A stretch of DNA of 64,000 bases. Source: Macrostomum lignano (Eukaryota). Below the pieces are notes generated by a model, which was not told the DNA's origin, searched no databases, and was given only the letters and a program-made list of their open reading frames with translations. This document shows positions 7,191 to 63,000 of this stretch, in pieces. A program made the position numbers and the translations under genes. How positions within the stretch are numbered: the first letter of the stretch is position 1; every line of letters starts with the position of its first letter. The DNA is taken from positions 1-64,000 of the forward strand of contig NIVC01000061.1 of the NCBI GenBank assembly GCA_002269645.1, written 5' to 3'.

Positions 7191-9092
<1,902 letters not shown>

Positions 9093-16504: not shown

Positions 16505-17807
<1,303 letters not shown>

Positions 17808-34917: not shown

Positions 34918-36240
34918 CCTCTCATCTTCTCATATCTCATCTCTCATCTCTTCGAGTCTCATCTCTTCCAGTCGCATCTCTTCCAGTCGCTTCTCTTCCA
35001 GTCTCATCTCTTCCAGTCTCATCTCTTCCAGTCTCCTCTCTTCCATTCTCATCTCTTCTAGTCTCCTCTCTTCCATTCTCATCTCTTCCAGTCCCATCTC
35101 TTCGAGTCTCATCTCTTCCAGTCTCATCTCTTCGAGCCTCATCTCTACTGCAGTCTCATCTCTTCCAGCCTCATCTCTTCGAGTCTTATCTATACTGCAG
35201 TCTCATCTCTTCCAGTCTCATCTATTCCTGTCTCATCTCTTCCAGTCTCCTCTCTTCCATTCTCATCTCTTCCAGTCCCATATTTTTGAGTCTCATCTCT
35301 TCCAGTCTCATCTCTACCAGCCTCATCTCTACCAGCCTCATCTCTACCAGCCTCATCTCTACCAGCCTCATCTCATCCAGTCTCATCTCATCCAGTCGCT
35401 TCTCTTCCAGTCTCATCTCTTCCAGTCTCATCTCTTCCAGTCTCCTCTCTTCCATTCTCATCTCTTCTAGTCTCCTCTCTTCCATTCTCATCTCTTCCAG
35501 TCCCCTCTCTTCGAGTCTCATCTCTTCCAGTCTCATCTCTTCGAGCCTCATCTCTACTGCAGTCTCATCTCTTCCAGTCTCATCTCTTCGAGTCTTATCT
35601 CTACTGCAGTCTCATCTCTTCCAGTCTCATCTATTCCTGTCTCATCTCTTCCAGTCTCCTCTCTTCCATTCTCATCTCTTCCAGTCCCATATTTTTGAGT
35701 CTCATCTCTTCCAGTCTCATCTCTTCGAGTCTCATCTCTACTGCAGTCTCATCTCTTCCAGTCTCATCTATTCCTGTCTCATCTCTTCCAGTCCCCTCTC
35801 TTCCATTCTCATCTCTTCCAGTCCCATATTTTTGAGTCTCATCTCTTCCAGTCTCATCTCTTCGAGTCTCATCTCTACTGCAGTCTCATCTCTTCCAGCT
35901 TCATCTCTTCCAATCTCAAATCTTCCAGCCTCATCTCTTCCAGTCTCATCTCTACCGGCCTCATTTCTTTGAGTCTCATAATCTCTTCGAGTCTCATCTC
36001 TTTTAGTCTTATCTCTTCGATTCTCATCTCTACCGGTCTAATATCTACCAGCCTCATCTTATCCAATCTCATCTCTTCCAGTCTCATCTCTTCTAGTCTC
36101 ATTTCTACCAGTCTCATCTCTACCAACCTCATCTCTCCCAACCTCATCTCTTCCAACCTTATCTCTCCCAACCTCATCTCTCCCAATCTCATCTCTTTCA
36201 ACCTCATCTCTTCCAATCTCATCTCTTTCAGTCATCTCTC
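34918..36240. repeat. Pyrimidine-rich 15-bp minisatellite (TCTCATCTCTTCCAG)n with higher-order duplication
   Basis: About 1.3 kb array; the block starting near 34982 recurs near 35391 (offset about 410 bp); explains the MRLEE/SLISS ORFs. Confidence 0.92.
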
Positions 36241-41130: not shown

Positions 41131-41358
41131 GAATGGGATGGGATGGGATGGAATGGGATGGAATGGGATGGGATGGGATGGGATGGAATGGGATGGGATG
41201 GGATGGGATGGGATGGGATGGGATGGGATGGAATGGGATGGGATGGGATGGGATGGGATGGGATGGGATGGGATGGGTTGGGATGGGATTGGATGGGATG
41301 GGATGGGATGGGATGGGATGGGATGGGATGGGATGGGATGGGATGGGTTGGGATGGGA
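41131..41358. repeat. (GGGAT)n pentanucleotide microsatellite immediately after the stop codon at 41130
   Basis: About 45 units; explains the MGWDG/HPIPS ORFs. Confidence 0.96.
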
Positions 41359-43019
41359 TGAAGATGATAAAAAGTGAGATCAGATCGGACAAGCATTTAT
41401 GCGATGAGATTAAGCGGTATAAGTTTTGATTCTGATTGAATGCAAGCATGGGATAAGCCTGCATGGGATCATGGGAAGCATCGATGTCATCTTGCCCCGC
41501 CACTGCTCCGTCGCACTCCAGCTGGCCCTTTCTGCACATCATCGCCCCCACGCCGCCAATATTCGTTGACCCAATCTGCTGCGAGAATGACTGACCCCAG
41601 CAATTTCCAGTCAGAGCAAGCGGCCAAGATCTATTGACATTTTTCTCAGGTTTGAATTCTCGTGCGAACATTTTTTTGCCTTCGTATCTCTGCCCGAGTT
41701 CCTGTGTTATTTTTCCCGGAGACGGCTGCTTTTATTTGATGCCCTGTCCGCCTTTCCCGATCGCAGTACTTTAAATCATAAATTGTACATCGCTCAGTAC
41801 AACACAGACCGGTTCTGTCCATTGCGTCTCCGGCAGAAGATAACTAACTGACTTTCGTATCCGTGTACAGAAGTGCGGTTCCGCTGTAATGTAAGACATT
41901 TTTTGCTTGAAAATTACCTTTCAGTGAAGACCCCCTTCTCTGCTCAAGGCGACCAAGTCAGTGCTATATTATTCAGATTCAATGCAACTTTGGACTTTGG
42001 GACTTTCTTACTTCAGTTTAAAACGAATTTATTGAATTGAGTAGTATGTACAGCTTTTAACGGATCAATAATTCAGAGCTGATAGAAAACAGGTAACTTT
42101 TACAGGCAGCAAGCAGAATGGACGGAAGCAAAGTAGCTAGCATTAAATTAGTGTAACCATACTTTTGAACTGCAGACTAAAGAGAAACTTCTACCGGATG
42201 AGGCTGGCAAGCAAAGTGCTGGCAAAATTTCAGTTTTCCCTGCCTTCTCAATGTTTCTTTTGCCGAATCGATTTTTTTTCATGGCCAATAATAAATCTTT
42301 CTTTAAACTTTATCTAGACAGACCTGTACATCAGCCCTAAAGACACAATGCTGGCTCCATTTGCAAATTGAAGTTCAGAAACTGAGATACTCGTACATTT
42401 GGTGCATTCAGTGCTCAAACACTGACAATATCCTACTCGCTAATGCAGTTTACGGCGATAGTATGTCTGCTTGAGTTTTTCAGGAGTGCGTCGTGTGCTT
42501 TTGCCGTGGACCCACAAGTTTGAGTTCTTGAATCACATTCTCGTTTCATTCTGCGTGTGTTAATGATGTTTTGCCATAGAAATAAGCAATTCTGCACGAT
42601 TGAGCCAAGGACTTACGAGCTACTCAAATAAAAGGACGTGAAACTATAGGTATCTTGGAAAATTTTAGAAGGCAGGTTTTTACAGAAAAATACATTATGG
42701 AGATAGGAAGTTTTCATTTTTCAGCACAAAAATTGTTATTGCTTTTGATAGAAGGGAGACCCAGTGTAGGCAGACGAGAATGTGTGATCAAATGTGACAC
42801 TCCGCGGACATGCACGGCTCGTTTAGAAGCTGCACTCGCTGCCAATGAAGAAGCGAATGGATTTGCCGCTGCAGCTGCTCCGCGCGTCTTCGAGCTCTAA
42901 CTCAACGAAGTCCTGCTTTGAAGTGTCGTCGGACATTGGACCGCCGTCCGTGCAGCCCACTGGGATGAACACAAAACTGCTGGTGGCGTCTACTGGAAGC
43001 TGCAGGGAGCCGTCCGAGA

Positions 43020-45008: not shown

Positions 45009-48000
45009 ATGCGTCTCGCACTGCTACTCCTCAGTGCTCTTCTATTTGTGACTGTCTTCTGCGAGCTTGCCGATGCTCGTCAAGGCAAAAGGTGAGCTAA
45101 AAGCTAAGGTTGATTTTGTAGATATAACCTTTTCAAGGGATTTTAGCCTAGTGGTTTACAGCGTCGGACTCACGACTTATAGGTCGGGGGTTCGAGTCCT
45201 GAACTTTGTGTCCTTGAGCAAGAAACTTAACTCTGCATCGCTTCAGTTTACCCAGCTGTAAAATGGGTGCCAGCATTAGCTGGGGTAATTGAGGGTCTTT
45301 GGATTAAACAGCCATTACACAGCCTTCAGATGCGCCGCGCAATAGCTGAGGCTGTGCTGTCGGTTGCACATCTGGCCTAATTGGGGCAGGTGTAATCAAT
45401 TGTTATTATTATTACTACTATTAGTATTATTTTTATTTTATTATCGTAGAGAAAACAGCTATCATTGCAAAAATTGTTGCCTCGGTCGTCGCGTATCAGG
45501 CAGTCACAATTTCTCGAGTTCAAATTTATAAGGGGTCACCTTTTTTATTTTTTTGTAAAAAAAGTGAAATCGAGAAAAATCGGGAAATCGCTGCCTAAGT
45601 AGCCGTTAAAACCTCGGAGAGTGAACAAGCGAACCAAATGCGCATCGTCCCATCTTGCAGCAGAAGCATGCGCAGCTACTACAAGCGCATGCGCAGCAGC
45701 ATGGTTAAGCTGAAAGGCCTGTCCTACAGTCGGACTCGCAGGGCCGCAGCCATGCGCGGCCGCAAAGCCCGGGTCAGATGGGCCCGCCGCTTGAAGGCCC
45801 GGCGAGTGCGACGAGCGGCGATTCGATATCGCGTCACTCGCGTCAGCCGGCGGATACGCAGGACCAGCTCGGTGGTGCGGCGGTCTCGAGTGACTAGCAG
45901 AGCGCGGGTCAGACGGGTCGCTAGGCGATCCAGCTACTCGCGCTGCAAGCTGGCTGCCACTCGCTTCGTCTCCTGCACCAGGCGGCTGTACACTCGCTGC
46001 CCTGCTGGCTACAAGCGCAGAGGCAACATGTGCTTCCGGGTCTACTGTCCGAAGCCGTACGTCCGTCGGGGAGCAAAGTGCGTCCGTTACAGACGCGTTG
46101 TTGCTCGCCGGATGGCCTGCCCTCGCGGCTTCACCCGCTACGGCAGCCGATGCGTCCAGCGGCTTGGACTGACCTGCAGCGCCGGCTACCGTGTCTACAA
46201 GGGCCGCTGCCACCTGGTCCGCTGTCCTGCCGGGTTCACCAAAATTGGCAACAGCTGCCGCAAGAGCTGCCGGAAAGGCTTCACTCTGAAAGGCTTCACT
46301 TGCGTCCGAATCCGGACCAGATGCCCCAAGAACTACTACCGCGTTGGTGCTCGGTGTGTGCGCTATCGCAGCGGTCGGGCAAGGTAAGAATTTACTGAAT
46401 CCATCTGGTTGCCTCTCAAAGTAAAATTTCAGTTGTTTTTAACTCTCAATACCATTGTTGCAACATTTCAGATGTCGATCTGGTTATAAGAGAAAAGGCA
46501 GCAAGTGCATTCGCATATTAAAATCTTGCCCGCGCAACTACAAGCGGCGGGGTAGGCGTTGTGTCCTTACCTGTCCTAGTGGACGGATTCCAAGGCGAAC
46601 AAGAGACGGTCGCGTTCGTTGTGTCGTTGTGGTATCCAGGTGCCCTGTTGGCTACAAGATAAAACGGATCCGAACGCGTCGTGGCTATAGGTAAGTGACA
46701 TTGTTGGGACTTTGTCGCCTCAGAAAATCTGGAACAGAAATACATCACATCTGTCTATCTACACCTAATCTAGAATCCAGTGCACAATGAACAGCGGCAG
46801 CTGCGCTAAAGGTTTCCGCAAGATCAGACGCTATAAACGCGGCTACTCCTGCGTGAGGATCGCTTGTCCAAAGAACTACGTGAAGCGCGGTAGCGCCTGC
46901 GTTTATCGCTATAAAAAGCGTCGTCGATGCCCCAGCGGCTACACTCGGATGGGATCCACGTGTCGGAGGATCCGCTGCCCCGGAGGCTATGTAAGGCGCG
47001 GCAGTCGATGCGTTTTCGTTCGGTGTCCAAGTGGCTACAGGCGAGCTGGTCGCATGTGCGTCAGGACAAGATTCGTTAAAACCTGCCCATCTGGCTGGGT
47101 GCGACACGGCAAGCTTTGCAGGCGGTTGATTTGCCCCTCTGGCTACAAAAAGGTCGGCCAGTACTGCATTAGTAAGTAGCAAACTCGACAAGACATATCT
47201 AAGCGTTACTTCTAAACCAAAACAAAGGAACTAAAGTGACTTATCTCTTACTCCTCCAGACAACTCATGTCCCTCCGGTTTTGTGAGAAGGCGACGCATG
47301 TGCGTGCGAAGTAAGTTCCATTTAACAATTGTACAACTGCAAAACTTTAGGCAGCGGGAACTGCTGCAATAACAATTAGTCATTCAATTATTCACTTTCA
47401 GCTCACTGCACAACTGGATACAAGAAGAAAGGAAAGCTATGCGTTCGTAAGCGAAAAAATCTCAACTTCGAATCTCAGAACTATGAGATTTAAATTATTC
47501 AATGCAATTTGCTTTCTACGAGTATATTCCAAAATTTTCAGGGAATTGTCCGAAAGGCACAAAGAAATCTGGACGATTCTGTGTCAGAATGAGATGCCCA
47601 AAACGTTTTCGACGAGTAGGAAAAAGTTGCGTCCGAAGTAAGCACTCATTAAATAAATTCTCGAAAGTGCTGTGAAATGCAGAGAGCATCTTAAGATACC
47701 AGCTTATGCAAAATCTGACCTTCCAGCAAAATGTCCCAGTGGTTACGCTAAGCGATATGTCCGACAGAAAGTCTACACAGGGCGCACAGTCTCCGGATCA
47801 GTGAGAAAGTGCAGCTGCATCGGAGCCAAGACTGGCAAGAAACCGTCCAAAAAGAACGCCATCGACATGGCATTCGTGGTCGACGTGACCGGCAGCATGG
47901 GATCGGTGATCCGCGCGATCAAGGCCAAGATCCGCGAGGTTATCAATGCGAACGCTAAGTCGCGCATCGTAAGTGGTTTTCAATCTAAATTTCAGAGCCC

Positions 48001-51000
48001 TAAATAAAGAAGACCAATTTTCTAACGTGGCAAACGAAACGCTACCTGGCCATTTCAGGTAAACAAATTCGTGCTTGTACCGTACGGCGATCCGAAAGTT
48101 GGTCCAGTGACGGCGACTCGTGCGCGATCTCGCAGCTCCGTGAACTCTCTCATCAGAGCAGTGAACGCAATGCGCGCATCTGGCGGAGGCGACTGCGCCG
48201 AGTTCGGCTTCTCGGGAATATACGAAGCGCTGACCAGAGTAAAGAAGAACTCAATTGTGTACGTGTTCACCGATGCGAGTCCGTCAGCTCGAGACAGACG
48301 GTGAGCAGACATGGCATGTGTAGCATGCAGTCTTTTGCTGCAATACCAAGATATCAGCGGAGAAATATTACGAATCTATGATATGGTCCTTATTAATTTT
48401 CAATCAGTACCTAAAGAATAGTCACTTCCGAATATAGTTGAGCACGAAAAAGCAATTAATAATCAGTTTATGAGTGGAAATACCTCAGATTTCATCTGAC
48501 GGGGCCCATAGATTCCCACGCAGTAGAAATTAGCCAAGAGTGCGGCAATTCTATAATGCTTCTAAGCAATTTAGTTGGCCTTTGAACAGTAGTAAGGAAC
48601 CGGCAACTCCTTCTCTTTTGTACTGCCGTGGTTGAAAGCATGTTCTTTAATTGACGCCTCTGATGTCTGGGGGGCTTTCGTTTCCTGGAACCGGGGACCC
48701 TGAAGACCCTGAAGCCCAATCGAGAGGATCAACTGCAGATCAAGGACTACTAGACTAGGAAAAGGCAACACTTGCAAATCGTGGAAAAATAGTTGAAGGC
48801 CGAACATTAAAACTGTCTCTATCTCTGAATCGATTGCATGTAGAAACATCCTGTACAATGGAGACATCCTATATTTTGGTGCGATTGGTATTTAAGTATA
48901 AGTTTAGGAAGCAAAATAAAGTAGCCAAAAATCTTCGGCGTAACATTTGTTATTACGCTCATAGTTCACTTCTAAACATTACAGAATATACTTAGCCTTG
49001 GCATATACCCAATATGACAAAGCAATGTTGGGTTTCTTTCCTATAGTTTAAGAGTAGGCCTGGTTATGAAAATTACTTATAATTTGCAGACACAAATCGC
49101 AATCAGTAAAAAATCTACGAGTAAGTTGAGCAATAAAATAGGCCTAGGCCCATTAAAATAATCTCCTATAGTCGATAAAAATAATTACAAGTAATTTAAA
49201 AATTGTAAAGGTGTATTACGCTCGTAATGTATCTGCTGATAACGAGGGAGTGTCGCAATAAAAACTGAGCCGCGAGGGCGAGGAACACAAAAACGCGTAA
49301 AAAATTAATTTGCGGTAAAACCATCTTAATTAAACCTAAGATGCCTATCAGAAATTATATTTTATATGAGAATTCTTCTAGCTTAAAGCCCAACTCTCGC
49401 TTCTAAAAACAGTCCATTTATCTAGTTCGTATCGTGTGAAAGTGAGATCCAGTGAGCTCCAAGCACTGCAAGTTGCATCAACCTTTTTTAGCAACTTGAG
49501 CTAAAAAGTCGTTTCTAACCCACAGTCCGTCCCATTCGCTGAATGTAGAGATGTTCTGAATTTTGAAGCTCTTCATGGACAGCAGGGAGAAGTTTCTCGA
49601 GGTCATGAAGCGCGTCACAAACTCGTAATTTTTGGACAATTGCGGTCTGTTACTGAGTTTTTTCCGCCAGAACTCCATCTGCAGCGCCATGATGTTGAGC
49701 TCTCTAAACAGCTTCTCGCCATTCTTCATGAACAGGTGCTCACCGGACTCGATGTCCATCTTGATGACCACATTCTTGGTGCCGATGTGCGCTCGAAGCT
49801 CGTCCGCTTTGACAGTGGTCACAGGAATCGTGTCCTCGATTAACTTCGTGACCTGCCGTTTCCAGTCAGCCAATCCGCCTGAGCCGCTTCCAGCGTTGCA
49901 ATCCATGCCGTCAGCGTCCCAACTGATCCGCTTGAGCGCCACGTCGTCACTGATGAAGCCCCAGAAAAGCTTCAGCTTGTCGTCAAGCAAGTTCAGCCGC
50001 TTCGCTGACATTTGCAGCCTGACCAGTACGCGAATGTTAGCATCGATGGCCACCACGGGATACCCGAGCTCTCTGGCTTGCAGGCTGTAGATGCTAAGGT
50101 TGCTGCCGATATCGAGGAACGTCGCAGAGTTTGTCGGAAACTTCTTTAACAGGTCGAGCATCGTATGAATTGCGCTACTTTCCCATTTATTGTATCTTAG
50201 AATTAGTCCGGAAATCATGTCCTCCTTGCCGAAGGTGACTATCGGCATTAAAGGGCCGCCCATCGCTCGGGTCACATTGGCCAGAGGAGACCCTTGTCTG
50301 ACAATGGTGTACAACTGCTGCGGTAAGTTCCTGTTCAGCTCGCACAGGGGAAACTTGCCCCTGACTAACTGGTAGGCCGGCGTCTCCTGACATAGTCGGT
50401 GCTTCAGGCTGGGGTTCGTGAAGTCGACATTGCGGAGCTCGTTGAATGGAGGACAGTTTTTTTATCATTTTGACATCGCTCAGCGTTGGCAGCGACTCTT
50501 CGGCGGTCAGGCTTTTGCTTCCAATGAGATTTAGTTTTGAAGCGGTCAATATTTTGGACCGATAGGTATAGGACTCCGAAGCGGTGAATTTTTGTTTCCG
50601 GGAGACGAAATACGTGACAGTGATTAGCGCAATCGATGCGCATGCCACAAGAAATACGTGTGTTATTCGCATTCTGTCACTTAAATTTTTTTTTGCTTTA
50701 AATTTGTTTCGAATTTCTCTATCTGCTTACGGTGATGTAGACTGTTATACAGAATTGCATTCTTCAATGTATACAATAGAGTACTGCCTGTCTATCCGAA
50801 TGTAAAAGCTTTGCTCCGTGCAGATTCTTTGAGCTCCTGTCGGACAATGCAGCGCATAACTTACCAAAGTTGTTTCGAAGGTAGACAATTGATACCACAG
50901 GTGCACATAATGAGATGTGCACCTGTGGAGGGACAGACCAATGGGGCCTCTGCTGTAAACGCATCTGACTGTCCCACCCCACCCCCCTTTCGGTTCGATT

Positions 51001-54000
51001 TTGTGCGCCGCGGCATTATTAATTTGGGGTATGTGCTCAAAAATTTGGCAGGGGGGGGGGGTTGTCGTGCCACTCACACCTACTGGGGGCCAACCCTAAG
51101 GCACAGAGCTCGTCTGGGCTACTAGAAAGTTAGGGCACTTTGTGAGAGCGTGCCTGCATACAATAACCGCGCGCTTGAATCAGACTCAGCGCTAGGTTGC
51201 CCGAAACTCTCCTGCAACTATTACTTATTGTCATAGGAATAGGCCGGGTCCAAGCGCAGGGAAGCTCGCGCGTGACAGTGGGTAGATCATTCAGTATCGG
51301 GATAATTTAGAAAAAATCAGAAATGCATAGCTCGAACTTTGGAAGCTAGAACAGCGACAAAAAATTAAACAAAAAAATTAAACGTAAAAACATACTCTCG
51401 ACAACCTGTTTTAGTTTCCACCCCGAAACCAGAAATTAACAAGTGGCAGGTTTAATCCAACTCTAGCCGTAACTCTCTACTCTCTCATCACCAGCCTAAG
51501 CTAGGGCCTTATGACGCAGGCTGCCTTTTTACTCCCGAACAGAGAGTAGTTACACAGAACATAGTAGCATACTATGATAGAGGGCACATTTACAGTCTAA
51601 AAGAAGTTCGCATGTCTTTACGATGCTACACTTATCGCATTGAATAAGTAGTATGCACTGTATGTGCGACTGCGCGTGTATGATTCGATTAAATTTATAG
51701 TACTGCATTAAACTCCACTGTCAACCCCACAAACAAATCTGGTTAAAGCAAACTGGCCCCCAAACCGGGTGTTGAGCAAAAATAACGACCCCAGAACACA
51801 GGCGAAGGGGTTGGGGTAGCCAAAAGAGGGTGGAAGTGTGCGCAAACGCCGGATACGCAAACCACCCAGTAAAATTTCTTGACTGCAGAAAGGAGAGCAA
51901 TGTCCGATCGCTGGCTCGAAAAAAGAAAGCTCAGCTGAACTTCCTCATAACCGGAAATCTGTGCGGAAGACGCAACTCGTACCGCAGTTTGTCTCGATCG
52001 ACTCGAGGCGCTTGGATCAAGATGAGCAGAACTCGGGCTAGCCGAGTGATGAGCTTCGTGAGTCGCGCTCTGAAACACGGCGCCACTGCGTTGAGAGGCT
52101 TGAACCGTGACGGTCTGTCGACGTTCGTATCGAGGCGCGAGAAGTGTAAGTGTCGTAGAGTTCCTCGAATCACGCCCAAGTACGCATATGTGAACGCGGT
52201 GAGATGCATAAGAAAATCGTCAAAGAAATGCCGCCGAGGCTATCGACTGCTGAAAGGACGGTGTGTTCGTCGTGCAGTGTCTCGAAGGTGTCCTAAAGGC
52301 TATCGTATGCAGACAACTCGACAGAAGAAGCGCGCTGGTAAGAGAGCAGTCGGCGGCTTCGTGAAGAAGTGCCGCTGTCTCCACGGCAAGCCGCCAGCCA
52401 AGGTCACGAAGCGAGCTCTTGACATGGCGTTTGTTGTCGACGTGACTGGCAGCATGAGCCGCGTCATCAGCGGAATCAAGGCCAAGATCAGAGAGGTTAT
52501 CGATGCGAACTCACGCTTCGGAGTGGTAAGCATGCAGCTTCGATTGCATTTCTTATTTTTATCGATAGTAAAGACAATTACTTATATTTGTGTCCATTGA
52601 TATTTTAGGTGGACAAATTTGTGTTGGTCCCATTCGCTGATCCAGTGGTCGGTCCTCGAGTCGTGAGTCGAGCAAACAATGCGAGATCGAGACGGCGACT
52701 GCTGAGTGCAGTGAACCGATTGAGAGCATCTGGCGGTGGCGACTGTCCTGAGCTGAGTCGCTCAGGCATGTACCAGGCAGCGTCGGTGCTGAAGCCGGGC
52801 TCTATCATGTACGTGTTCACCGACGCCAGCTCATCGAGAAAGGACAAGGTGTAAGTATTTCGCTTAGGTGTTAGATGTTGTAAGATGTAGTAAGATGTGC
52901 AGCTTGTTAGCTTGCTGTACAAAAAGACACCGAGGCATTGGGGCGTCAGTGGAATTGCAGCTATGGAGGGGAAAATTAGTTACACACAATCTGCTGACCC
53001 GTGGGCACTGACCCGTACACAAATACGTACACGGGCACGAACTCACGTGGTGTGTCCAGCGTTACTCGTCTACTTACTCGTTAGGAATGTACACGTTCGG
53101 TTGGTTGTGGATAGGCCCTCTTGAAAACCAGCTAAAACAAGCATGTGTACTAATTTTGTAAAGGAGTTTTGAATTAATGTGAAATCACACTGAACTACAG
53201 TCGCGTTTACCACTGAACTACTCTGACCCCGCTTAGCTATTGCATGTAGGAGCGTAGTAATGTTAATTATCGTTTTAAATTCATCGCTTCTCCGTAAATT
53301 CATATTAAATGTAAGTTTTTCCTTTGGTTTGTTACTCAGGAGCCAAGCAGCTTTGCAGAAACTGATCAGCAGCAGAAAAATCCAGGTGAACTTCCTCATC
53401 TCTGGAAACCTCTGCGGACGTCGCAGTTCGTACAAGAACCTCGCAAAGAAAAGCAGCGGCTCGTGGACCGCAATGAACAAACGAATGTCCAACCGAGTTC
53501 TGTCGTTCATCAGCAGCGCTTTGGCTTTCGGAGCCAGACGCATGCGACAGCTGAACCGCAGCGGTCTGGCCAGATTCGTGAGACACCGCAAACGCTGCCG
53601 CTGTACCCGAACTCGGCGCACGGTGAACACCTACAAGTACGTGACGGTGCGCAGGTGCGTGAGGCGCAGTGCTGCCCGGACTGGCGGCAGCAGTTCGAGC
53701 GGCAGTCGAGGACGTCGAAGGTGCCCGCCAGGATTCCGGACAGTTCGGTCTGGTCGGCGCGGTAGTGTCAGATGCGTGCGCAGGAGCTCCAGTGAGTATC
53801 TACAGACGATTGTACTGAGTTTAAATGTACATGATTTTGTAAATTCTTGAGTCTGAAACCCAGTCAAATTATCTGCGAAAATCTTTCACAAGTAAGGCTC
53901 AAGCTTTCCTGTCTATGACTCCTATTAATCGAAACGCTGTATAAATGCAGGCACTAAATTTATTTTGTTGCAAATTTGTGGTAGTATTTGATAAAAATTA

Positions 54001-57000
54001 GGATTGATTTCGTTAAAATCTGAATTTAATTTTTCGATAATTTTATAATATTGAAGAGTCTTTCTGCTTCACACACAGTATTCGAAACTCCGGTTTTATC
54101 GATGCACTGCCGGCTACTTTATTAGTTAGTTTATCGCTCGTTCGTTCGAATCATAGGGGCTCTGAACAGCTCACTAATCAAAGCGACAGACGTCTCATAG
54201 CCATAAAGGGCAGGTGGTAACGTCTCAGGATGCCTCACAATGTATAAAACTTATTTAAACCTTTGTATTTTGTGACACTTTCTGACATTGTCCTAGTATA
54301 TTTTTAGGTGAACGCGGCGTTAAGTAACACATTCAACTAAGATTCCATTGCTGAAAACAAGAGAGAAATTCTATCGCACAAACAAGCCACACAGTAACCC
54401 ACCCCACCCCACACACGCAACAACCACAACACGCATCACCACCCCTAACGCCTACCCCCCACTAACCCCGGTTAGCACTAGCGATTTTTGCTTTGATGTG
54501 CAAATGCCTAAAACCATAGACATCTCGTCTCATTATCTACTCCATTTCTTTTGTTAAGGACGCTCTATCCACTGACGTATTTTAATTTGTCGTTGTTGCT
54601 ATCTGAGGAAAATGAAGGAGTCAGTGTGTAAAACCCTCTGAAAAATCTAGTTCAAGCAATGCTCACAGGCGCAGCAAATAGTTGCACAAATTTTCTACTT
54701 CAACTTAAATTCTTTTTATAATTAACATCAGAGTAAATCATTCTTTACTTGGCTACATGTGTCCTTAAATCGAATTGTAACTGCTGCATTATTACCACTG
54801 ACTCATGAACCTTGAAGCATAATTTTGTAACTATTTGTCACTTTCACTGTTTCAGAACGTTGTGGAAAATACTTCCGACGATATGGCAGAAAGTGCATCA
54901 GAGGTGAGAAATGATTGACTGCTAAATAGCTCGAGGTAAATTTATTTAAATATGTGCGTATGCACCGAGTAAAATTGAAACTGCTTTGTGCAATCGGTTG
55001 CAGTTCGCTGCCCGCGCAGCATGAAGTCAAGGCGCATTCGCTCGAGAGTCCGAGTCGGCAAGCGTGTGGCTGGCTACACTAAGAAGTGCAGCTGCATCGG
55101 AGCCAAGACTGGCAAGAAACCGTCCAAAAAGAACGCCATCGACATGGCATTCGTGGTCGACGTGACCGGCAGCATGGGATCGGTGATCCGCGCGATCAAG
55201 GCCAAGATCCGCGAGGTTATCAATGCGAACGCTAAGTCGCGCATCGTAAGTGGATTTCAATCTAAATTTCAGAGCCCTACATAAAGAAGACCAATTTTCT
55301 AACATGGCAAACGAAACGCTACCTGGCCATTTCAGGTAAACAAATTCGTGCTTGTACCTTACGGCGATCCGAAAGTTGGTCCAGTGACGGCGACTCGTGC
55401 GCGATCTCGCAGCTCCGTGAACTCCCTCATCAGAGCAGTGAACGCAATGCGCGCATCTGGCGGAGGCGACTGCGCCGAGTTCGGCTTCTCAGGAATATAC
55501 GAAGCGCTGACCAGAGTAAAGAAGAACTCAATTGTGTACGTGTTCACCGATGCGAGTCCGTCAGCTCGAGACAGACGGTGAGCAGACATGGCATGTGTTG
55601 ATTAAGTTAATTTTGCTTTTTTGCTACCAATACCAAGATATCAGCTGAAAAAATATTATAACTCAATTTTCATGACTCCAGAAAGGAGAGCAACGTCCGA
55701 TCGCTGGCTCGAAGAAAGAACGCTCAGCTGAACTTCCTCATAACCGGAAATCTGTGCGGAAGACGCAACTCGTACCGCGGTTTGTCTCGATCGACTCGAG
55801 GTGCTTGGATCAAGATGAGCAGAACTCGGGCTAGCCGAGTGATGAGCTTCGTGAGTCGCGCTCTGAAACACGGCGCCAGTACGCTGAGAGGCTTGAACCG
55901 TGACGGTCTGTCGACGTTCGTATCGAGACGCGAGAAGTGCAGGTGTCGCAGAGTTCCTCGATTTACAGCAAAGTACTCGTATGTAAATTCTGTAAAGTGC
56001 GTTAAGCGTTCTACATCCAAATGTCGTCGAGGATACAGACGCGTGAAGGGCAGGTGCGTGAGGTACTCGAGAAGGTGCCGTCGAGGATACAGACGCGTGA
56101 AGGGCAGGTGTGTAAGGTACTCGAGAAGATGCCGTCGAGGATACAGACGCGTGAAGGGCAGGTGCGTGAGGTACTCTAGAAGGTGCCGTCGAGGATACAG
56201 ACGCGTGAAGGGCAAGTGTGTGAGGTACTCGAGAAGGTGCCGTCGAGGATACAGACGCGTGAAGGGCAGGTGCGTGAGGTACTCGAGAAGGTGCCGTCGA
56301 GGATACAGACGCGTGAAGGGCAGGTGTGTGAGGTACTCGAGAAGGTGCCGTCGAGGATACAGACGCATGAAGGGCAGGTGCGTGAGGTACTCTAGAAGGT
56401 GCCGTCGAGGATACAGACGCGTGAAGGGCAGGTGCGTGAGGTACTCGAGAAGGTGCCGTCGAGGATACAGACGCGTGAAGGGCAAGTGTGTGAGGTACTC
56501 GAGAAGGTGCCGTCGAGGATACAGACGCGTGAAGGGCAGGTGCGTGAGGTACTCGAGAAGGTGCCGTCGAGGATACAGACGCGTGAAGGGCAGGTGCGTG
56601 AGGTACTCGAGAAGGTGCCGTCGAGGATACAGACGCGTGAAGGGCAGGTGTGTAAGGTACTCGAGAAGGTGCCGTCGAGGATACAGACGCATGAAGGGCA
56701 AGTGTGTGAGGTACTCGAGAAGGTGCCGTCGAGGATACAGACGCGTGAAGGGCAAGTGTGTGAGGTACTCGAGAAGGTGCCGTCGAGGATACAGACGCGT
56801 GAAGGGCAAGTGTGTGAGGTACTCGAGAAGATGCCGTCGGGATACAGACGCGTGAAGGGCAGGTGTGTGAGGTACTCGAGAAGGTGCCGTCGAGGATACA
56901 GACGCGTGAAGGGCAAGTGCGTGAGGTACTCGAGAAGTTGCCGTCGAGGATACAGACGCGTGAAGGGCAAGTGCGTGAGGTACTCGAGAAGGTGCCGTCG

Positions 57001-60000
57001 AGGATACAGACGCGTGAAGGGCAAGTGTGTGAGGCACTCGAGAAGGTGCCGTCGAGGATATAGACGCGTGAAGGGCAGGTGCGTGAGGCGCGGGGCTGCC
57101 CGGACTGGCGGCAGCAGTTCGAGCGGCAGTCGAGGACGTCGAAGGTGCCCGCCAGGATTCCAGACAGTTCGGTCTGGTCGGCGCCGTCGTGTCAGATGCG
57201 TGCGCAGGAGCTCCAGTGAGTATCTTTAGACATTTGTACCGTGTTTACATGTTCATCGTTTTGTAAAGTATTGAGTTTTTAATGGAATCAAGTAATTTGC
57301 CAAAAGTGTTTCCTAGTAAGACTTCAACCTTTCCTGTGACTCTCATAAATAGAAACTCCGTATCAATGTGGACCCACTTAATGCTCCGTAAAATTGGATT
57401 TTATAGAAAGAACGATTGATTAATTCCGTGAAAAGTTCGACTACTTCGTGTACAGAGATTTTTTGTAATTTCAATGACACAGACAATTTTTTCTAGCTGG
57501 TATTTTAGAAACAGTAAACGAAACTCATAATTTACTAATTTACGAGCGTACTGACGGCAACTTTATTAGTTACTTTATGGTTCGTTTGGTCGAACCATAG
57601 GGTCTCTGAAAAACTCCGCCAATCAAAGCGACAGTCATCTCACAACAATTGAAGGCAGATGGTAGGGCTTCAGTATGCCTCACAATACACAAAACTTAAA
57701 CTGTAAACTTTTGTACGCTCGTATTTCGTGAGAGTTGTTGAAATTGTCCTGCATTTTTGGTAAACGATGTCTCAAGGTGTAAAAATTTGGGTTGGGACTT
57801 TCCTTGGCTCCACTACTCGAAAGTCGGCTTTGGGACTCTCTGTTGTGCGCTCGCAGTTGCTGATTTTTGTAAAGCCAGCTTATTTGACTAGTGAAATACT
57901 TAGTGAGCCGAAAATCAATTCTCAATCTTGCAATGAAAGATCTGCAAGTCTGTAACAGTAATTAACATAAATAGCTGATATAATTTATTGCCAAACATCT
58001 GAAAATGAGACGCAAGCCAGCACGAAGCCCCTCGAAATATAAATTGTAAAGTTAATACGCTCGAACGATGTGGCATAAAATAACACATTTAAGTAAGATT
58101 CACAAGCAAGTTGACACAGCTAAGAGGAAGAAACAATCTATTGCGCAAACCACTCGCACAGGGCCAGGCCCGTACCTACACACAACCACACATGCAACAA
58201 GTACCATAGCGCGCAACACCACCCCAAACATCTACTCATACAAACTCCGGTTAGCCACTAGCGATGCTCGTCAAGCCGGTAGATTACTGCGCCAACGCCT
58301 AAAACCAGAGATATCCCTGAGCATTATCTTCTTTTCTTTTGAGAAGGGGAAGAATAAAGGTGTTTGCTCGTACAGTCTGGATAAGAGCCAATTTTTTACT
58401 TCAAATTAAATTCTTTCAAAACATCAACTTCAGGGTCAATAATTACTTATTATGGCCATATTTGCCGGTTCATTGGATTGTAATCGTTGCTTTACGAGTG
58501 TATAACCACTGAATTATTGAGCACGTTTATTTAAACTAGCTTGTATTACAACTTTTACTATTTTAGAACGTTGTGGAAAATACTTCCGACGATATGGCAG
58601 AAAGTGCATCAGAGGTGAGAAATGATTGACTGCTAAATAGCTCGAGATAAATTTATTTAAATATGTGCGTATGCACCGAGTAAAATTGAAACTGCTTTGT
58701 GCAATCGGTTGCAGTTCGCTGCCCGCGCAGCATGAAGTCAAGGCGCATTCGCTCGAGAGTCCGAGTCGGCAAGCGTGTGGCTGGCTACACTAAGAAGTGC
58801 AGCTGCATCGGAGCCAAGACTGGCAAGAAACCGTCCAAAAAGAACGCCATCGACATGGCATTCGTGGTCGACGTGACCGGCAGCATGGGATCGGTGATCC
58901 GCGCGATCAAGGCCAAGATCCGCGAGGTTATCAATGCGAACGCTAAGTCGCGCATCGTAAGTGGTTTTCAATCTAAATTTCAGAGCCCTAAATAAAGAAG
59001 ACCAATTTTCTAACATGGCAAACGAAACGCTACCTGGCCATTTCAGGTAAACAAATTCGTGCTTGTACCGTACGGCGATCCGAAAGTTGGTCCAGTGACG
59101 GCGACTCGTGCGAGATCTCGCAGCTCCGTGAACTCCCTCATCAGAGCAGTGAACGCAATGCGCGCATCTGGCGGAGGCGACTGCGCCGAGTTCGGCTTCT
59201 CGGGAATATACGAAGCGCTGACCAGAGTAAAGAAGAACTCAATTGTGTACGTGTTCACCGATGCGAGTCCGTCAGCTCGAGACAGACGGTGAGCAGACAT
59301 GGCATGTATTGATTAAGTTAATTTTGCTTTTTTGCTACCAATACCAAGATATCAGCTGAAAAAATATTATAACTCAATTTTCATGACTGCAGAAAGGAGA
59401 GCAACGTCCGATCGCTGGCTCGACGCAAGAACGCTCAGCTGAACTTCCTCATAACCGGAAATCTGTGCGGAAGACGCAACTCGTACCGCGGTTTGTCACG
59501 ATCGACTCGAGGCGCTTGGATCAAGATGGGCAGAACTCGGGCTAGCCGAGTGATGAGCTTCGTGAGTCGCGCTCTGAAACACGGCGCCAGTACGCTGAGA
59601 GGCTTGAACCGTGACGGTCTGTCGACGTTCGTATCGAGGCGCGAGAAGTGCAGGTGTCGCAGAGTTCCTCGATTTACAGCAAAGTACTCGTATGTAAATT
59701 CCGTAAAGTGCGTTAAGCGTTCTACATCCAAATGTCGTCGAGGATACAGACGCGTGAAGGGCAGGTGCGTGAGGTACTCGAGAAGGTGCCGTCGAGGATA
59801 TAAACGTATCGGCGGCAAATGCAAGAAAGCAGTTAGCGTTGGAGGTGAGTTTAATGGATGCTGTTTTGAGTCACTTGAGTCCCTTTTATAGCGCAAAGCA
59901 AGGTTTAAAAGCTACTCCACCTTGATTATAGTATCCTGTGGAACTTTCCGGTGCACTCGAGGCATGAGTTGTCTGAAGAAATACCGATACGATGCCCGCG

Positions 60001-63000
60001 TTAGATCTTCTGCACGAGCAGCTTACAGCGCTCGATTGGTTCGCGCCACCCGCTGGTTCAACTCTAGACGAGCAGCCGAAGCTCGACGTCACAAACTATT
60101 TTTAAGAAACATGAAACCTCGCCTATCAGGTGAGCCAAACAGGATTTATGATTTTCGTAAAAATGCGATAAAAAGTCATCAGAAAAATTGCTTTCAGCCA
60201 AACGAGTGAGCCGCTTCTGCGAGCATAAAACTGGCACCGTCAGCTGCCCGCGAGGTACCACGATCGACATTGTTTCCGGATTATACGGCCGCGTATCCAA
60301 TAAGTACTGCACTCGGGGACCCAGACGCACCACCTCTTGTTCAGCTCGTACAGCCAGTTCGCGTATAAGAAGCTCTTGTCAGAACAGGCAGTCGTGCCGA
60401 CTTTCAGCTAGCAATAGCGTCTTTGGCGACCCTTGCGTTGGTACGCTGAAGTACGTGGAGATTCGCTACAGATGCAAGGCGACGCGAGCCACGACCGGTG
60501 CACGAAAGGCCGAGAAAGCAAGATACGCCGCCGCTTTGAAGAAACTTTCAAGAAGTTACAACATGATGAAGGCGAAACTAAACGCCTCCTTAAAACGCTT
60601 GCAATCCAGGGTCAGCCGGTGTGCATTTGTAGCCCCGAAAAAAAGTAAGTAACTTTTTATCCATCACTTCTTTCATTCTTCTTTCATCACATGTTCAGGA
60701 GAGTCTTTTCGTTTATTACGCAATTCAGCTGGCTGCAAGGCGGTCAGGTGCGGCAGAGGCAAGAAGTGCGTGATGAGAAGACGGCGCTTTGCTGGTCGAA
60801 TGGCCTACAAACCGGCCTGCGTTAGGGTGCCGCCGAGTGGTAAGATTTGCACGTTTCTGTAAAATAAGCTGCCGTTCTTCAAGCCAAATAGAAAGTGCAC
60901 ACTTCAACCAAAATTGCAGCTCTGTGTGCCAGAATCAGATGCGGTCGCGGGCGTCGCTGCGTGATTCGGACGACAAGGCGTCGAATTGGGCGTCGAGTGC
61001 GAGTTTTCAAGTCGGCTAAATGTCAGCCCAGGAAAAGTAAGCTTCGAGGCGAATTTGGACAACAAAATCTATTTTTTATAGAGTGAAACAATTACTTTTG
61101 AGCAAAGATTTCACGAATGACCGATGTGCTAATCCCTGTATTGGTTACTGAGTCTAAGTCAGTCTACTCTAAATTGTCCTTTTCGGCAGGTCTCTACACG
61201 GTGGAATTAATGAAAGGACTCAACTTTAGGATTTAACATCCACAAATCAGATCTTTCCATGTATATATATATATATATATACGCCCTCCAAATCAAGACT
61301 ACTTGGCGCTTTGAATGCGATATAAATACTTCTAAAATATTTCTAAAACCTTCCTAATCACAAGACGTTCAACAATTTACCTTTCCAAAGCAGGAATATC
61401 AGTAATATTTAAATACTCTTTGAATTTCATCTTCTGAAATATTTCTTAAAAAGTTGAAATTGCTGAGACAGATATGTGCCTTTAAATCAAGGTCTGTTAC
61501 GTTAAGTATCCATTATAAATAGGTTCTTGAAATCGCTTGAAATGTTAGTTAGTAAGCATCGTATTGTAAAACCGTTCTTTTTTATCCTACTGTGAGAATG
61601 AGTCGCCGTCATGGCGATATTTCGGATTTTCAAGTCAGATCGTCCAGAATTTTCAGTAAGAAATAGACTCACCGTAAAAACATTCGACACCCTTTCTTGT
61701 GACTTTTCCAACAGACCTGTGCAGCACCATGAAGTGCCGCTCGGGCTCGCGGTGCCGAGTTGTCTATCAAACCAAGACTGTGCGTCGCCGGGTGCGCAGG
61801 CGTCAGAAGCGATGCTCCTGTAATCGGGCAGTCAAATCGAAGGCGGCGAAATCCGCAGCAAGAGGCTCCGCTGTTGACATGGCGTTCGTGATTGATACGA
61901 CCGGAAGCATGGGCCGAGTGATTCGCAGCATTCAGAGCAACATAATTAAGATTGTGAAGGCTAACAGAGGCACAGTCAGTCGGTTTGTTGTCGCTCCATT
62001 TAATGATCCTAAGGTAAGACGCTGGAGTTTTGAAAGTAATTCAGTGACAAAATATCTGAAAAGACTCAGCTCTCTCAAAATCTATTTAAAGTTTACTAAG
62101 TTTGAGCTTTGATGGCAAATTTAATGCCAGTTTTAAGGAGCCTCGAGCCCATTCCACTGACCCTTGACTACGCACACGGATACGCAGCCAAGTACACTCT
62201 CACAGGGTGGCCAGTGGCCCTTACTTTCACATCGTCAGGTAGTGTAAAGAATCTGTGAATTGCAGAGCTTGGTCCTCATGGGGGAAAATTCCCAGACAAA
62301 GGGCCTGTCAACTTAAGCTCACAAAGTGGAGCCCGAGTAACCTATGTGCACAAATTATGCGTCGTTCTGCTCACAGTGACACTAGGAAGCTATATTTGGC
62401 AAAAATGCGACAAAAATTGGACTTGGGATAGGGAAGAATAACCAAGGGGATGATTAGTGACTTATATTAACTTAAGCTTATAAAGTCCCTAATTATGTCC
62501 TTGCTTGTTCTCCCCGAACCCAAGTCAAATTTTTGTCGCATTTTTGCCAAACCCAGCTTCCTGGTGTCACTGTGAGCAGAACAACGCATCATTTTTGTGG
62601 TTACCCGGGCTCCACTTTATGAGCTTAAGTTGACAGGCTGTTTTTGTGCTCAAATCCTAAACTAATTTGGCTGCGCCTGGACGGCTTCTCTGCCCCTTCT
62701 AAGTCGCTAGGGAATGTGGTGAAAAATGATTGTTAAGTGATTCTCGGTTTTAGAGTTCTGCTTCTTTAAAATTGACGACCTCCTTTCTTACGAGATATGT
62801 TTTCCAAGCAGCGCCACACAAGTTAAAGCCTGGATATAATGTTTTAAGCCCATCTTAGATGTGCTTTCATGATTCACTATTTTTGCTTATCATTTAGGTC
62901 GGGCCGCTGACAGTCAGCACGAAGGCGGGATCAATAGTATCAGCAGTGAGACGCCTGAGGGCTCGAGGCGGCGGCGACTGTCCAGAGTTAGCGATGCGCG

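What the first reader, a model, noticed from the sequence alone, without database searches (positions are those of the whole stretch)
48301..51888. Antisense FkbM-family methyltransferase nested in the intron that splits VWA1, absent from the homologous introns of VWA3 and VWA4
Seen: the intron after ...ARDR is 3,588 bp here but only 104 bp in the paralogous units (55578-55681, 59289-59392). The first ~70 nt (GTGAGCAGACATGGCATGT...ATACCAAGATATCAGC..AATATTA) and the TGACTGCAG acceptor are shared, so about 3.5 kb was either inserted here or lost from the duplicates. That segment holds an intronless, type II-anchored methyltransferase on the opposite strand. Known: the FkbM family includes the rhizobial sugar O-methyltransferase NoeI, and planarians and molluscs carry O-methylated glycans whose enzymes are poorly defined. 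Inference: a candidate Golgi-lumen glycan O-methyltransferase, physically embedded in a secreted lectin-bearing matrix gene, which raises the possibility of co-regulation or transcriptional interference in one secretory cell type.
Basis: partly seen in the sequence, partly recalled or inferred. Interest (0 to 1): 0.78.

Follow-up and report, generated by a model that had tools for sequence, protein, structure and literature searches.

The report
Broken methyltransferase gene inside a flatworm intron
One intron of a secreted-protein gene of the flatworm Macrostomum lignano has gained a 3.5 kb insert carrying an antisense FkbM-type methyltransferase gene, but a real frameshift separates that gene's membrane anchor from its catalytic domain, so it is more likely a decaying duplicate than a working Golgi sugar-methylating enzyme.

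Summary
The sequence observation holds. The intron at 48301-51888 is 3,588 nt, against 104 nt in units 3 and 4, and the intron ends are shared. Four of the five VWA units have a short intron at this position (87-489 nt), so the 3.5 kb is a gain.

The insert carries an intronless antisense gene of an FkbM-like methyltransferase family. Support comes from the family HMMs, an AlphaFold model, and best fold matches to viral FkbM proteins. Its named relatives are M. lignano paralogues and uncharacterised mollusc proteins, not bacterial ones.

The gene is not intact. One extra base in an A-run (T7 at 50457-50463 on the + strand) separates the start codon and membrane anchor from the catalytic domain.
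- A second genomic copy about 97% identical (NIVC01003288.1) has the same extra base and also a 2-nt indel just after its ATG.
- Both copies have Ser in place of a SAM-motif glycine that is invariant in 38 relatives.
- No intact allele appears in public protein collections.

One thing points the other way. The catalytic ORF is as conserved between the two copies as the host exons are, so an anchorless product under selection is not excluded.

Intact paralogues lie elsewhere in the genome and are not nested in VWA genes. Co-regulation with the host is untested.

The parts
48059..48300 (+). Host exon encoding the middle of VWA unit 1 (VNKFVLVPYG...TDASPSARDR). It ends in codon phase 2 at the donor.
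   Evidence: Acceptor CAG at 48056-48058 and donor GTGAGC at 48301 read directly. 98.8-99.4% identical to the matching exons of units 3 and 4. Part of the VWA_4 match.
48301..51888 (+). Host intron, 3,588 nt, GTGAGC...TGACTGCAG. The equivalent intron is 104 nt in units 3 and 4, 489 nt in unit 2 and about 87 nt in unit 5.
   Evidence: The VWA_4 domain is continuous across the junction.
48301..48372 (+). 5' intron segment shared with the 104-nt introns of units 3 and 4.
   Evidence: Alignment. blastn gives 74-76% over 82 columns.
48373..51866 (.). Inserted block of about 3.5 kb, unique within the window. It has no terminal inverted repeats, long terminal repeats, target-site duplication or poly(A) tract at its borders.
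   Evidence: It is present, collinear and about 97% identical, in the second genomic copy L001.
51867..51888 (+). 3' intron end (TAAAATTTCTTGACTGCAG) shared with the short introns.
50464..50672 (-). Methyltransferase gene, part 1: ATG (50670-50672), hydrophobic anchor VFLVACASIALITVTYFVS, and stem. Read onward in this frame it gives a 161-aa product with an out-of-frame tail, ending at 50187.
   Evidence: Kyte-Doolittle 19-residue maximum 2.24. 3.8% diverged from L001 plus a 2-nt indel, with no sign of constraint.
50457..50463 (-). Frameshift site: A7 on the coding strand, where the intact paralogue has A6. The second copy, L001, has AAAAGAA, which is also 7 nt.
   Evidence: Three-way alignment. 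Stops TGA TAA lie immediately upstream in the catalytic frame.
49478..50458 (-). Methyltransferase gene, part 2: 326 codons plus stop (49478-49480). It contains the Cys-bearing N-terminal extension, SAM motif I (DIGSNLS, with Ser in place of the invariant Gly) and the KMDIESGE motif. The first in-frame Met is at 50261-50263, which would give a 261-aa product.
   Evidence: TIGR01444 E 8.6e-9. AF2 model mean pLDDT 82.5. FkbM fold matches. 5 mismatches in 978 nt and no gaps against L001.
51889..52525 (+). Host exon encoding the end of VWA unit 1, a basic Cys-containing linker, and the start of VWA unit 2.
   Evidence: ORF and splice sites read. 93% identical to units 3 and 4 over 51872-52191.
55578..55681 (+). 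Homologous 104-nt intron of unit 3 (acceptor variant TGACTCCAG).
59289..59392 (+). Homologous 104-nt intron of unit 4.
52851..53339 (+). Homologous intron of the more divergent unit 2 (489 nt, same phase 2).
   Evidence: with splice sites read from the printed flanks.

Best explanation
A block of about 3.5 kb carrying a single-exon gene of a Macrostomum FkbM-like methyltransferase family was inserted, antisense, into the short intron that splits VWA unit 1 of a large secreted VWA/SUEL-lectin gene. The host still has canonical GTGAG...CAG splice sites, so for the host the insert is simply a longer intron.

The inserted gene has since been disabled at its 5' end. One extra base in an A-run puts the start codon and signal anchor out of frame with the catalytic domain, and an invariant SAM-binding glycine has become serine. 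The locus therefore cannot make the membrane-anchored, lumen-facing enzyme that its intact paralogue (BOX15_Mlig013827g5, 373 aa) encodes.

It is most likely a young duplicated pseudogene that may still be transcribed. Any translation would give a 161-aa anchor with a nonsense tail, or a 261-aa anchorless fragment.

Shown: the anatomy, the shared lesion, the family and fold, and the direction of the insertion. Inferred: loss of function, transcription, and the ancestral enzyme being a Golgi sugar O-methyltransferase.
For: - Frameshift. Read directly and placed by alignment with the intact paralogue.
- Second copy. L001 (NIVC01003288.1) is collinear over about 21 kb at about 94-99% identity. 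It has the same extra base written differently (AAAAGAA), so this is not a homopolymer miscall. It also has a 2-nt indel that takes its ATG out of frame.
- The N-terminal part and 5' flank are the most diverged stretch of the locus: 3.8% and 5.5%, with 30 mismatches in 50400-50899.
- The motif-I Gly is conserved in 38 of 38 other family members but is Ser in both copies.
- No protein at least 90% identical with an intact N-terminus was found among 5.8 billion clusters. Exact products of this window are not on record.
- Branch estimates suggest relaxed constraint on this lineage: omega about 0.48, against 0.33 on the intact-paralogue branch and 0.73 on a definite pseudogene branch.
- The family shows birth and death. 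There are four identical intact copies (L002-L005) and a fragmented third paralogue (L006).
- Gain of the insert: four of five VWA units have introns of 87-489 nt at this position.
Against: - The 978-nt catalytic ORF has only 5 differences (2 non-synonymous, 3 synonymous) and no indel between the two copies. That places it in the lowest 2-3% of same-size windows over 12.7 kb, comparable to host coding exons. This suggests continued constraint after the shared frameshift, unless gene conversion homogenised it.
- The ORF is still open for 326 codons in both copies.
- GenBank carries a 261-aa model for the L001 copy, and that annotation was derived from RNA-seq-based transcripts plus TransDecoder (PMC5730564). 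The locus is therefore probably transcribed.
- Both sequences could come from long-read assemblies, in which indel errors occur.
- Ser at the last motif-I position is tolerated in some class I methyltransferases (general knowledge, not tested here).
Confidence: 0.55

Rival explanations
1. The catalytic domain is still a functional gene without its anchor. It would be translated from the internal Met (261 aa) or from an AUG supplied by the spliced leader, giving a soluble, probably cytosolic, methyltransferase with a changed role. The old 5' end decays freely.
For: - The post-frameshift ORF is as conserved as host exons and free of gaps between the two copies (5 mismatches in 978 nt; lowest 2-3% of windows), while the 5' part diverges fast.
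- dN/dS between the copies is 0.19, though on only 5 changes.
- All seven columns that are invariant across the whole alignment, this copy included, are by definition kept: D, G, G, K, D, E, E. The only column fully conserved in the other 38 members that this copy breaks is the motif-I Gly.
- The GenBank model of the L001 copy is transcript-derived.
- The M. lignano spliced leader ends in ATG, and 30-39% of genes are trans-spliced.
Against: - A start at the internal Met deletes 66 conserved residues, including modelled secondary structure and the conserved cysteines. Those cysteines suggest a secretory-pathway domain.
- Gly to Ser in motif I.
- Five substitutions are too few for a selection test, and gene conversion between the duplicates would give the same pattern.
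- I saw no [T/C]TNCAG trans-splice motif between the stops and the first Met when reading the sequence. This was an inspection only, not a scan.
Confidence: 0.25
2. The gene is intact in the animal and encodes the type II-anchored Golgi-lumen sugar O-methyltransferase the first reader proposed. The frameshift would be an assembly artefact, or be bypassed by slippage on the A-run.
For: - The lesion sits in a homopolymer.
- Removing one A restores a 397-aa protein collinear with the intact 373-aa paralogue.
- The catalytic ORF is well conserved.
Against: - A second contig has the same 7-nt length with an internal G (AAAAGAA), which is neither a pure homopolymer nor slippery. Its ATG region is additionally broken by a 2-nt indel.
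- N-terminal changes between the copies are mostly non-synonymous.
- Motif-I Gly to Ser.
- No intact protein in the collections.
Confidence: 0.12
3. The methyltransferase is bacterial contamination, or a recent horizontal transfer from bacteria.
For: - The FkbM family is mainly bacterial (family knowledge).
- The gene is intronless.
Against: - It lies inside a spliceosomal intron between exons of one VWA domain, on two independent contigs.
- Every named relative among 30 sampled hits is M. lignano, a mollusc or a dinoflagellate.
- Only 664 of 1.84 billion representatives reach E 1e-3, so ordinary bacterial FkbM proteins are remote.
Confidence: 0.02

Closest known systems
BOX15_Mlig013827g5 (P0001), an intact 373-aa M. 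lignano FkbM-domain protein present as four identical gene copies
   Same: 75% protein identity, 84% DNA identity over the coding sequence. Single exon. Same N-terminal hydrophobic anchor, Cys-bearing extension, and DxGxNxG and KMDIESGE motifs.
   Different: Its frame is continuous (A6), its motif-I Gly is present and its stem is shorter. It is not located inside a VWA/lectin gene within 10 kb on either side. dS against the window copy is 0.37.
BOX15_Mlig033454g1 (P0002), the annotated 261-aa product of the second copy of this locus (NIVC01003288.1)
   Same: 99% identical. Same nested position in the same host intron, same frameshift, and same Gly to Ser change.
   Different: Two amino-acid differences. 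AAAAGAA rather than A7. An extra 2-nt indel after the ATG. Several 77-112-nt indels in the flanks.
Bacterial and viral FkbM-family O-methyltransferases (Pfam PF05050 / TIGR01444; e.g. FkbM of FK506 biosynthesis, NoeI of rhizobial Nod-factor fucose methylation, V. cholerae RfbT; giant-virus FkbM proteins)
   Same: Class I SAM-methyltransferase fold. Best structural matches are viral FkbM proteins (TM-score normalised to the target 0.75, rmsd 3.9 A, E 2.6e-11). HMM matches; PF05575 RfbT is hit by 3 relatives. The substrate classes of NoeI, FkbM and RfbT are from my own knowledge, not tested here.
   Different: The sequence relationship is remote: this protein scores just under both curated cut-offs, and PDB 2py6 reaches only E 0.0018 with the family profile. 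The animal clade adds an N-terminal membrane anchor and a Cys-containing extension. No substrate is known.
Uncharacterised FkbM-domain proteins of molluscs (Haliotis, Mytilus, Crassostrea, Ostrea, Mya, Pinctada, Bulinus, Potamilus)
   Same: Nearest named relatives outside Macrostomum, at 21-30% identity with E down to 1e-29. Mostly 300-450 aa with an N-terminal hydrophobic segment and the same invariant residues.
   Different: No function is assigned to any of them. I did not examine their gene structure or genomic context.
Antisense genes nested in introns of larger genes (a common arrangement in animal genomes, e.g. OMG/EVI2A/EVI2B in a human NF1 intron; from my own knowledge)
   Same: A whole small gene on the opposite strand inside one host intron, with host splicing signals intact.
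   Different: Here the nested gene is frame-broken, and the host intron's paralogous copies in the same gene show the empty state.

Membership tests
FkbM-family methyltransferase (PF05050 / TIGR01444) | Match to the family HMM above the curated cut-off | tested here: inconclusive
   The repaired protein scores 18.3 bits against a 22.7 cut-off for PF05050 (E 0.0027), and 36.0 against 37.7 for TIGR01444 (E 8.6e-9). 22 of 23 aligned relatives hit PF05050, best E 4e-18.
FkbM-family methyltransferase (PF05050 / TIGR01444) | Class I SAM-methyltransferase fold whose nearest structural neighbours are FkbM proteins | tested here: met
   AF2 model mean pLDDT 82.5, pTM 0.86. PDB hits are generic class I methyltransferases at E about 1e-5. 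Most of the top 30 BFVD hits are named FkbM methyltransferases, best E 2.6e-11 with TM-score normalised to the target 0.75.
FkbM-family methyltransferase (PF05050 / TIGR01444) | SAM-binding motif I (D-x-G-x-N-x-G) intact | tested here: not met
   The window and L001 copies read DIGSNLS. The final Gly is present in 38 of 38 other family members.
FkbM-family methyltransferase (PF05050 / TIGR01444) | Conserved K-x-D-x-E-x-x-E motif and the other invariant acidic residues | tested here: met
   K232, D234, E239 and E261 are invariant in the 40-sequence alignment, this copy included.
FkbM-family methyltransferase (PF05050 / TIGR01444) | SAM-dependent methyl transfer | not testable with these tools
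   Needs a recombinant enzyme assay.
Type II-anchored Golgi glycan-modifying enzyme | N-terminal signal anchor in the same reading frame as the catalytic domain | tested here: not met
   A +1 frameshift at 50457-50463, shared with the second copy. The intact paralogue does meet this feature.
Type II-anchored Golgi glycan-modifying enzyme | Single hydrophobic segment near the N-terminus | tested here: met
   VFLVACASIALITVTYFVS, Kyte-Doolittle 19-residue mean 2.24. Orientation cannot be decided from flanking charges: +1 plus the N-terminus on one side, +3 on the other.
Type II-anchored Golgi glycan-modifying enzyme | Golgi-lumen location and a sugar acceptor | not testable with these tools
   The only support is taxonomic association with lineages that carry methylated glycans (PMC3155867, PMC6272458). 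As of 2023 the animal enzymes were unidentified (PMC7614267).
Nested intronic antisense gene | Lies wholly within one spliceosomal intron of a host gene, on the opposite strand | tested here: met
   GTGAG...CAG intron at 48301-51888. The VWA_4 domain is continuous across the junction. The ORF at 50672-49478 is on the minus strand. The same arrangement is seen in L001.
Nested intronic antisense gene | Independent transcription of the nested gene | not testable with these tools
   Indirect evidence only: the GenBank model of the L001 copy comes from an RNA-seq-based annotation (PMC5730564). No Logan or ENA transcript-derived protein was found.
Pseudogene (duplicated, non-processed) | Frame-disrupting lesion relative to an intact paralogue, and not an assembly artefact | tested here: met
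   Same extra base in two contigs, with different sequence at the site. A second lesion in L001.
Pseudogene (duplicated, non-processed) | Neutral evolution of the coding sequence after the lesion | tested here: inconclusive
   The N-terminal part looks neutral (3.8% plus an indel). The catalytic part is unusually conserved (0.5%, dN/dS 0.19 on 5 changes). Branch omega is about 0.48.
Processed retrogene or transposon-borne insertion | Poly(A) tract, target-site duplication, or terminal repeats at the insert borders | tested here: not met
   No terminal inverted repeats, long terminal repeats or target-site duplication. No poly(A) tract or AATAAA within 580 nt of the stop. No transposase or RT domain in the remaining ORFs. 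Being intronless is uninformative, because the intact paralogue is intronless too.

The most novel reading that the evidence does not exclude
This clade of membrane-anchored FkbM-like enzymes from flatworms and molluscs is the still-unidentified animal glycan O-methyltransferase family (methyl-mannose and methyl-galactose of planarians and molluscs). In addition, the nested copy is not dead: selection maintains its catalytic domain as an anchorless enzyme, expressed from within the intron of a secreted lectin-bearing gene. The family-level half alone I put at about 0.35. The figure given here is for both halves holding together for this locus.
Probability: 0.12. Interest if true: 0.6.

Novelty: new member of a known kind. 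Interest (0 to 1): 0.27.

Why it matters
As it stands this is a tidy example of intron growth by gene insertion, with the empty site preserved in paralogous repeats of the same gene, followed by decay of the inserted gene. That is useful for annotating a heavily duplicated genome but is not surprising.

The wider lead is at the family level. M. lignano has at least half a dozen divergent FkbM-like genes, mostly with N-terminal anchors, and their nearest named relatives are in molluscs. Flatworms and molluscs are lineages known for O-methylated glycans, and the enzymes responsible have not been identified in any animal (PMC7614267, PMC3155867). The intact paralogue BOX15_Mlig013827g5 would be the sensible gene to test, not the copy in this window.

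Tried and rejected
- Transposon or retrogene origin of the insert. No terminal repeats, target-site duplication, poly(A) tract or transposon domains. Homology to the intact paralogue stops at the coding-sequence ends, so the mode of insertion stays open.
- Other features in the intron. No Rfam family, no tRNA, and only two trivial tandem repeats. A perfect 14-nt palindrome at 50895-50928 was left unexplained.
- Rescue of the frame by splicing. In the catalytic frame, TGA TAA lie directly before AAA AAC TGT, and the window has no AG between them and the conserved NCPPF. L001 does have AAAAG|AAC, but the window does not, so this is not a shared solution.
- Spliced-leader AUG rescue. The leader ends in ATG, but I saw no consensus acceptor. 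Untestable without reads.
- Host being the adhesive proteins Mlig-ap1 or Mlig-ap2. Rejected: those carry vWD, C-type lectin or TSP domains, not VWA_4 plus SUEL.
- Bacterial contamination or horizontal transfer. Rejected.
- Sequence search of solved structures with the family profile gave only weak generic methyltransferase hits, with FkbM 2py6 at E 0.0018.
- The second word-indexed homologue search, run with the family alignment as query, added little because of the candidate cap.
- Exact-sequence look-ups of three possible products of the window found nothing.
- Literature searches for an animal FkbM glycan methyltransferase found none.

Full report
**Source and observation.** The window is Macrostomum lignano DNA. 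The antisense protein's only close database relatives are BOX15_Mlig proteins, and a second contig of assembly GCA_002269645.1 (L001, NIVC01003288.1) is collinear with window 39.8-60.7 kb at about 94-99% identity.

- The donor 22-mer and the acceptor 21-mer each occur three times, at units 1, 3 and 4. Chance expectation is 0.01 or less.
- The intron is 3,588 nt in unit 1 and 104 nt in units 3 and 4.
- About 72 nt at the 5' end and about 20 nt at the 3' end are shared.
- Nothing in between recurs in the window.

**The intron is real and the host is as described.** Joining 48300 to 51889 gives a product whose Pfam VWA_4 match (E 3.8e-37) runs across the junction. A SUEL lectin domain (E 9e-21) lies at 60188-60652. 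The splice sites GTGAG and CAG fit the M. lignano consensus reported in PMC8629364. The host is not one of the described adhesive proteins Mlig-ap1 or Mlig-ap2, which have vWD and C-type lectin or TSP domains (PMC6410801).

**Gain, not loss.** All five VWA units have an intron at, or within a few codons of, this position. The sizes are 3,588, 489, 104, 104 and about 87 nt. Unit 5's intron differs in phase and sits a few codons away. A short intron is therefore the ancestral state, and the 3.5 kb in unit 1 is an insertion.
- It predates the split between the window and L001, because both copies have it. In L001 the two exon matches lie about 3.7 kb apart.
- I found no terminal repeats, target-site duplication, poly(A) tract or transposon domains at its borders.
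- Homology to the intact paralogue ends at the coding sequence. How it was inserted is unknown.

**The antisense gene.** On the minus strand an ATG at 50670-50672 opens a frame encoding a 19-residue hydrophobic segment (Kyte-Doolittle 2.24) and a stem. After ...LSDVKMIK the frame runs on into nonsense (161 aa in total).

The methyltransferase homology continues in the +1 frame from 50458 to the stop at 49478-49480 (326 codons). At the switch the window reads ATGATAAAAAAACTGTCC where the intact paralogue reads TTGATCAAAAACTGTCCC, which is one base more. Deleting one A gives a 397-aa protein collinear with the paralogue's 373 aa.

**The frameshift is real.** L001 has the same length at the site but reads AAAAGAA. 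This is not a pure homopolymer, so a homopolymer miscall is unlikely there. L001 also has a 2-nt indel a few codons after its ATG, so its start is out of frame as well.

Between the two copies the N-terminal part differs by 3.8% plus that indel, mostly at non-synonymous sites, and the 5' flank differs by 5.5%. No protein at least 90% identical with an intact N-terminus appears in the 5.8-billion-cluster collection. The exact products of the window are not on record.

**Family.**
- The repaired protein sits just under the curated cut-offs of PF05050 and TIGR01444 (E 0.0027 and 8.6e-9). However, 22 of 23 aligned relatives hit PF05050, and three hit the V. cholerae RfbT family.
- An AlphaFold model built on a 40-sequence alignment is confident (mean pLDDT 82.5, pTM 0.86).
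- Against the PDB it matches class I methyltransferases in general.
- Against predicted viral structures, most of its best matches are named FkbM methyltransferases (E 2.6e-11, TM-score normalised to the target 0.75, rmsd 3.9 A).
- A full HMMER scan of 1.84 billion representatives found only 664 relatives at E 1e-3 or better.
- Of the 30 hits I looked up, the named ones are other M. lignano paralogues (at least six 50%-identity clusters), eight mollusc genera and one dinoflagellate.

This is an animal clade, not a recent bacterial acquisition or contamination.

**Functional state: evidence for decay.**
- The shared frameshift, and the second lesion in L001.
- The free divergence of the anchor region.
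- Ser in place of the final Gly of SAM motif I (DIGSNLS), in both copies. That Gly is present in 38 of 38 other members.
- Branch estimates on 218 codons: omega is about 0.48 for this lineage, 0.33 for the intact-paralogue branch and 0.73 for a third paralogue (L006). L006 is plainly a pseudogene, being interrupted and truncated.

**Functional state: evidence against simple decay.**
- The 978-nt catalytic ORF differs at only 5 sites (2 non-synonymous, 3 synonymous; dN/dS 0.19) and has no indel between the copies.
- Only 2-3% of same-size windows across 12.7 kb are that similar. Those that are either overlap this ORF or start at the extreme left edge (41400-41413), and the ORF's 500-nt mismatch counts match those of the host coding-exon bins.
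- Five changes cannot carry a selection test, and gene conversion between duplicates would look the same. Still, the pattern is real and I leave it as the main unexplained point.
- The GenBank annotation of this assembly was derived from genome-guided RNA-seq transcripts with TransDecoder ORFs (PMC5730564). The 261-aa model on L001 therefore implies some transcription.

**Mechanism and rivals.**
- Best reading (0.55). The locus is a duplicated, inserted paralogue that can no longer make the anchored enzyme and is decaying from its 5' end. For the host it is only extra intron.
- First rival (0.25). The catalytic domain survives as an anchorless product, started at the internal Met or at an AUG donated by the spliced leader, which ends in ATG.
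- Second rival (0.12). The gene is intact in vivo and the frameshift is an artefact or is bypassed. The AAAAGAA copy argues against slippage.
- Third rival (0.02). Contamination or horizontal transfer. Effectively excluded.

**Comparison with the known, and novelty.** Antisense genes nested in introns are common in animals (my own knowledge). UniProt already labels the close relatives 'Methyltransferase FkbM domain-containing protein'.

New here are the nested position, the evidence that the insert is a gain, and the demonstration that both known copies are frame-broken.

It fits the family: an N-terminal anchor, conserved cysteines, mollusc relatives, methylated mannose in planarian N-glycans (PMC3155867), and animal glycan methyltransferases still unidentified in 2023 (PMC7614267). 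The right test object is the intact paralogue, which is not in this window and is not nested in a VWA/lectin gene.

Nothing here bears on co-regulation or transcriptional interference.

Noticed in passing
window 56025-57088: Long in-frame array of a 54-nt (18-aa) unit, CRRGYRRVKGRCVRYSRR, in the host gene: an extremely basic, Cys-containing repeat between VWA units 3 and 4. The array length seems to differ from the L001 copy, judging from the staggered BLAST hits.
   Followed up: partly
window 45638-47179 and 51889-52525: Further Lys/Arg- and Cys-rich segments with recurring C-P-x-G-[YF] motifs upstream of and between the VWA units. There is only a faint cEGF hit (E 0.024). The overall host architecture is five VWA_4 units, basic Cys repeats and one SUEL lectin domain at 60188-60652. 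[quoted passage not shown]
   Followed up: partly
window 39780-40700 and 40990-41400: Two tandem-repeat arrays upstream of the host gene. One is about 900 nt and gives many staggered self-similar BLAST hits at 16-nt offsets against L001. The other encodes (GMGWD)n in one frame. Both are probably satellites or microsatellites.
   Followed up: no
L006 9484-10525 (NIVC01000869.1): A third paralogue of the methyltransferase, about 90-92% identical in DNA to the window copy. It is clearly a pseudogene: its coding sequence is interrupted by roughly 290 nt of unrelated sequence, has frameshifts, and is truncated at ...RLFSELN*. GenBank annotates a 146-aa 'partial' protein from it (BOX15_Mlig024470g2). 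It keeps the motif-I Gly, so the Gly to Ser change is specific to the window/L001 lineage.
   Followed up: yes
L002-L005 (NIVC01001090.1, NIVC01000986.1, NIVC01002787.1 twice): The intact paralogue occurs four times with identical protein sequence, in blocks more than 99% identical that share a common breakpoint about 1 kb upstream of the gene. Two of the copies are in opposite orientation on one contig. This is an example of the recent large-scale duplication of this genome.
   Followed up: partly
window 50895-50928: Perfect 14-nt inverted repeat with a 6-nt spacer (CCACAGGTGCACAT / ATGTGCACCTGTGG), about 220 nt upstream of the methyltransferase ATG. It is followed by C-rich and G-rich runs (50975-50990, 51053-51063). 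No Rfam match. It could be a promoter element or a repeat remnant.
   Followed up: no
window 55673-55681: Unit 3's intron acceptor reads TGACTCCAG where units 1 and 4 read TGACTGCAG. The AG is kept.
   Followed up: no
window 7001-9000, 17001-18000, 22001-23000, 35001-36000: Strong strand-composition anomalies: AT skew up to 0.91, and GC skew of +0.74, -0.73 and -0.66. These probably reflect simple-sequence or satellite arrays.
   Followed up: no
window 45136-45424 and L002 6551-6867: An 81% identical 300-nt match between the host-gene upstream region and the flank of the intact methyltransferase paralogue, in a different relative orientation. Probably a dispersed repeat.
   Followed up: no
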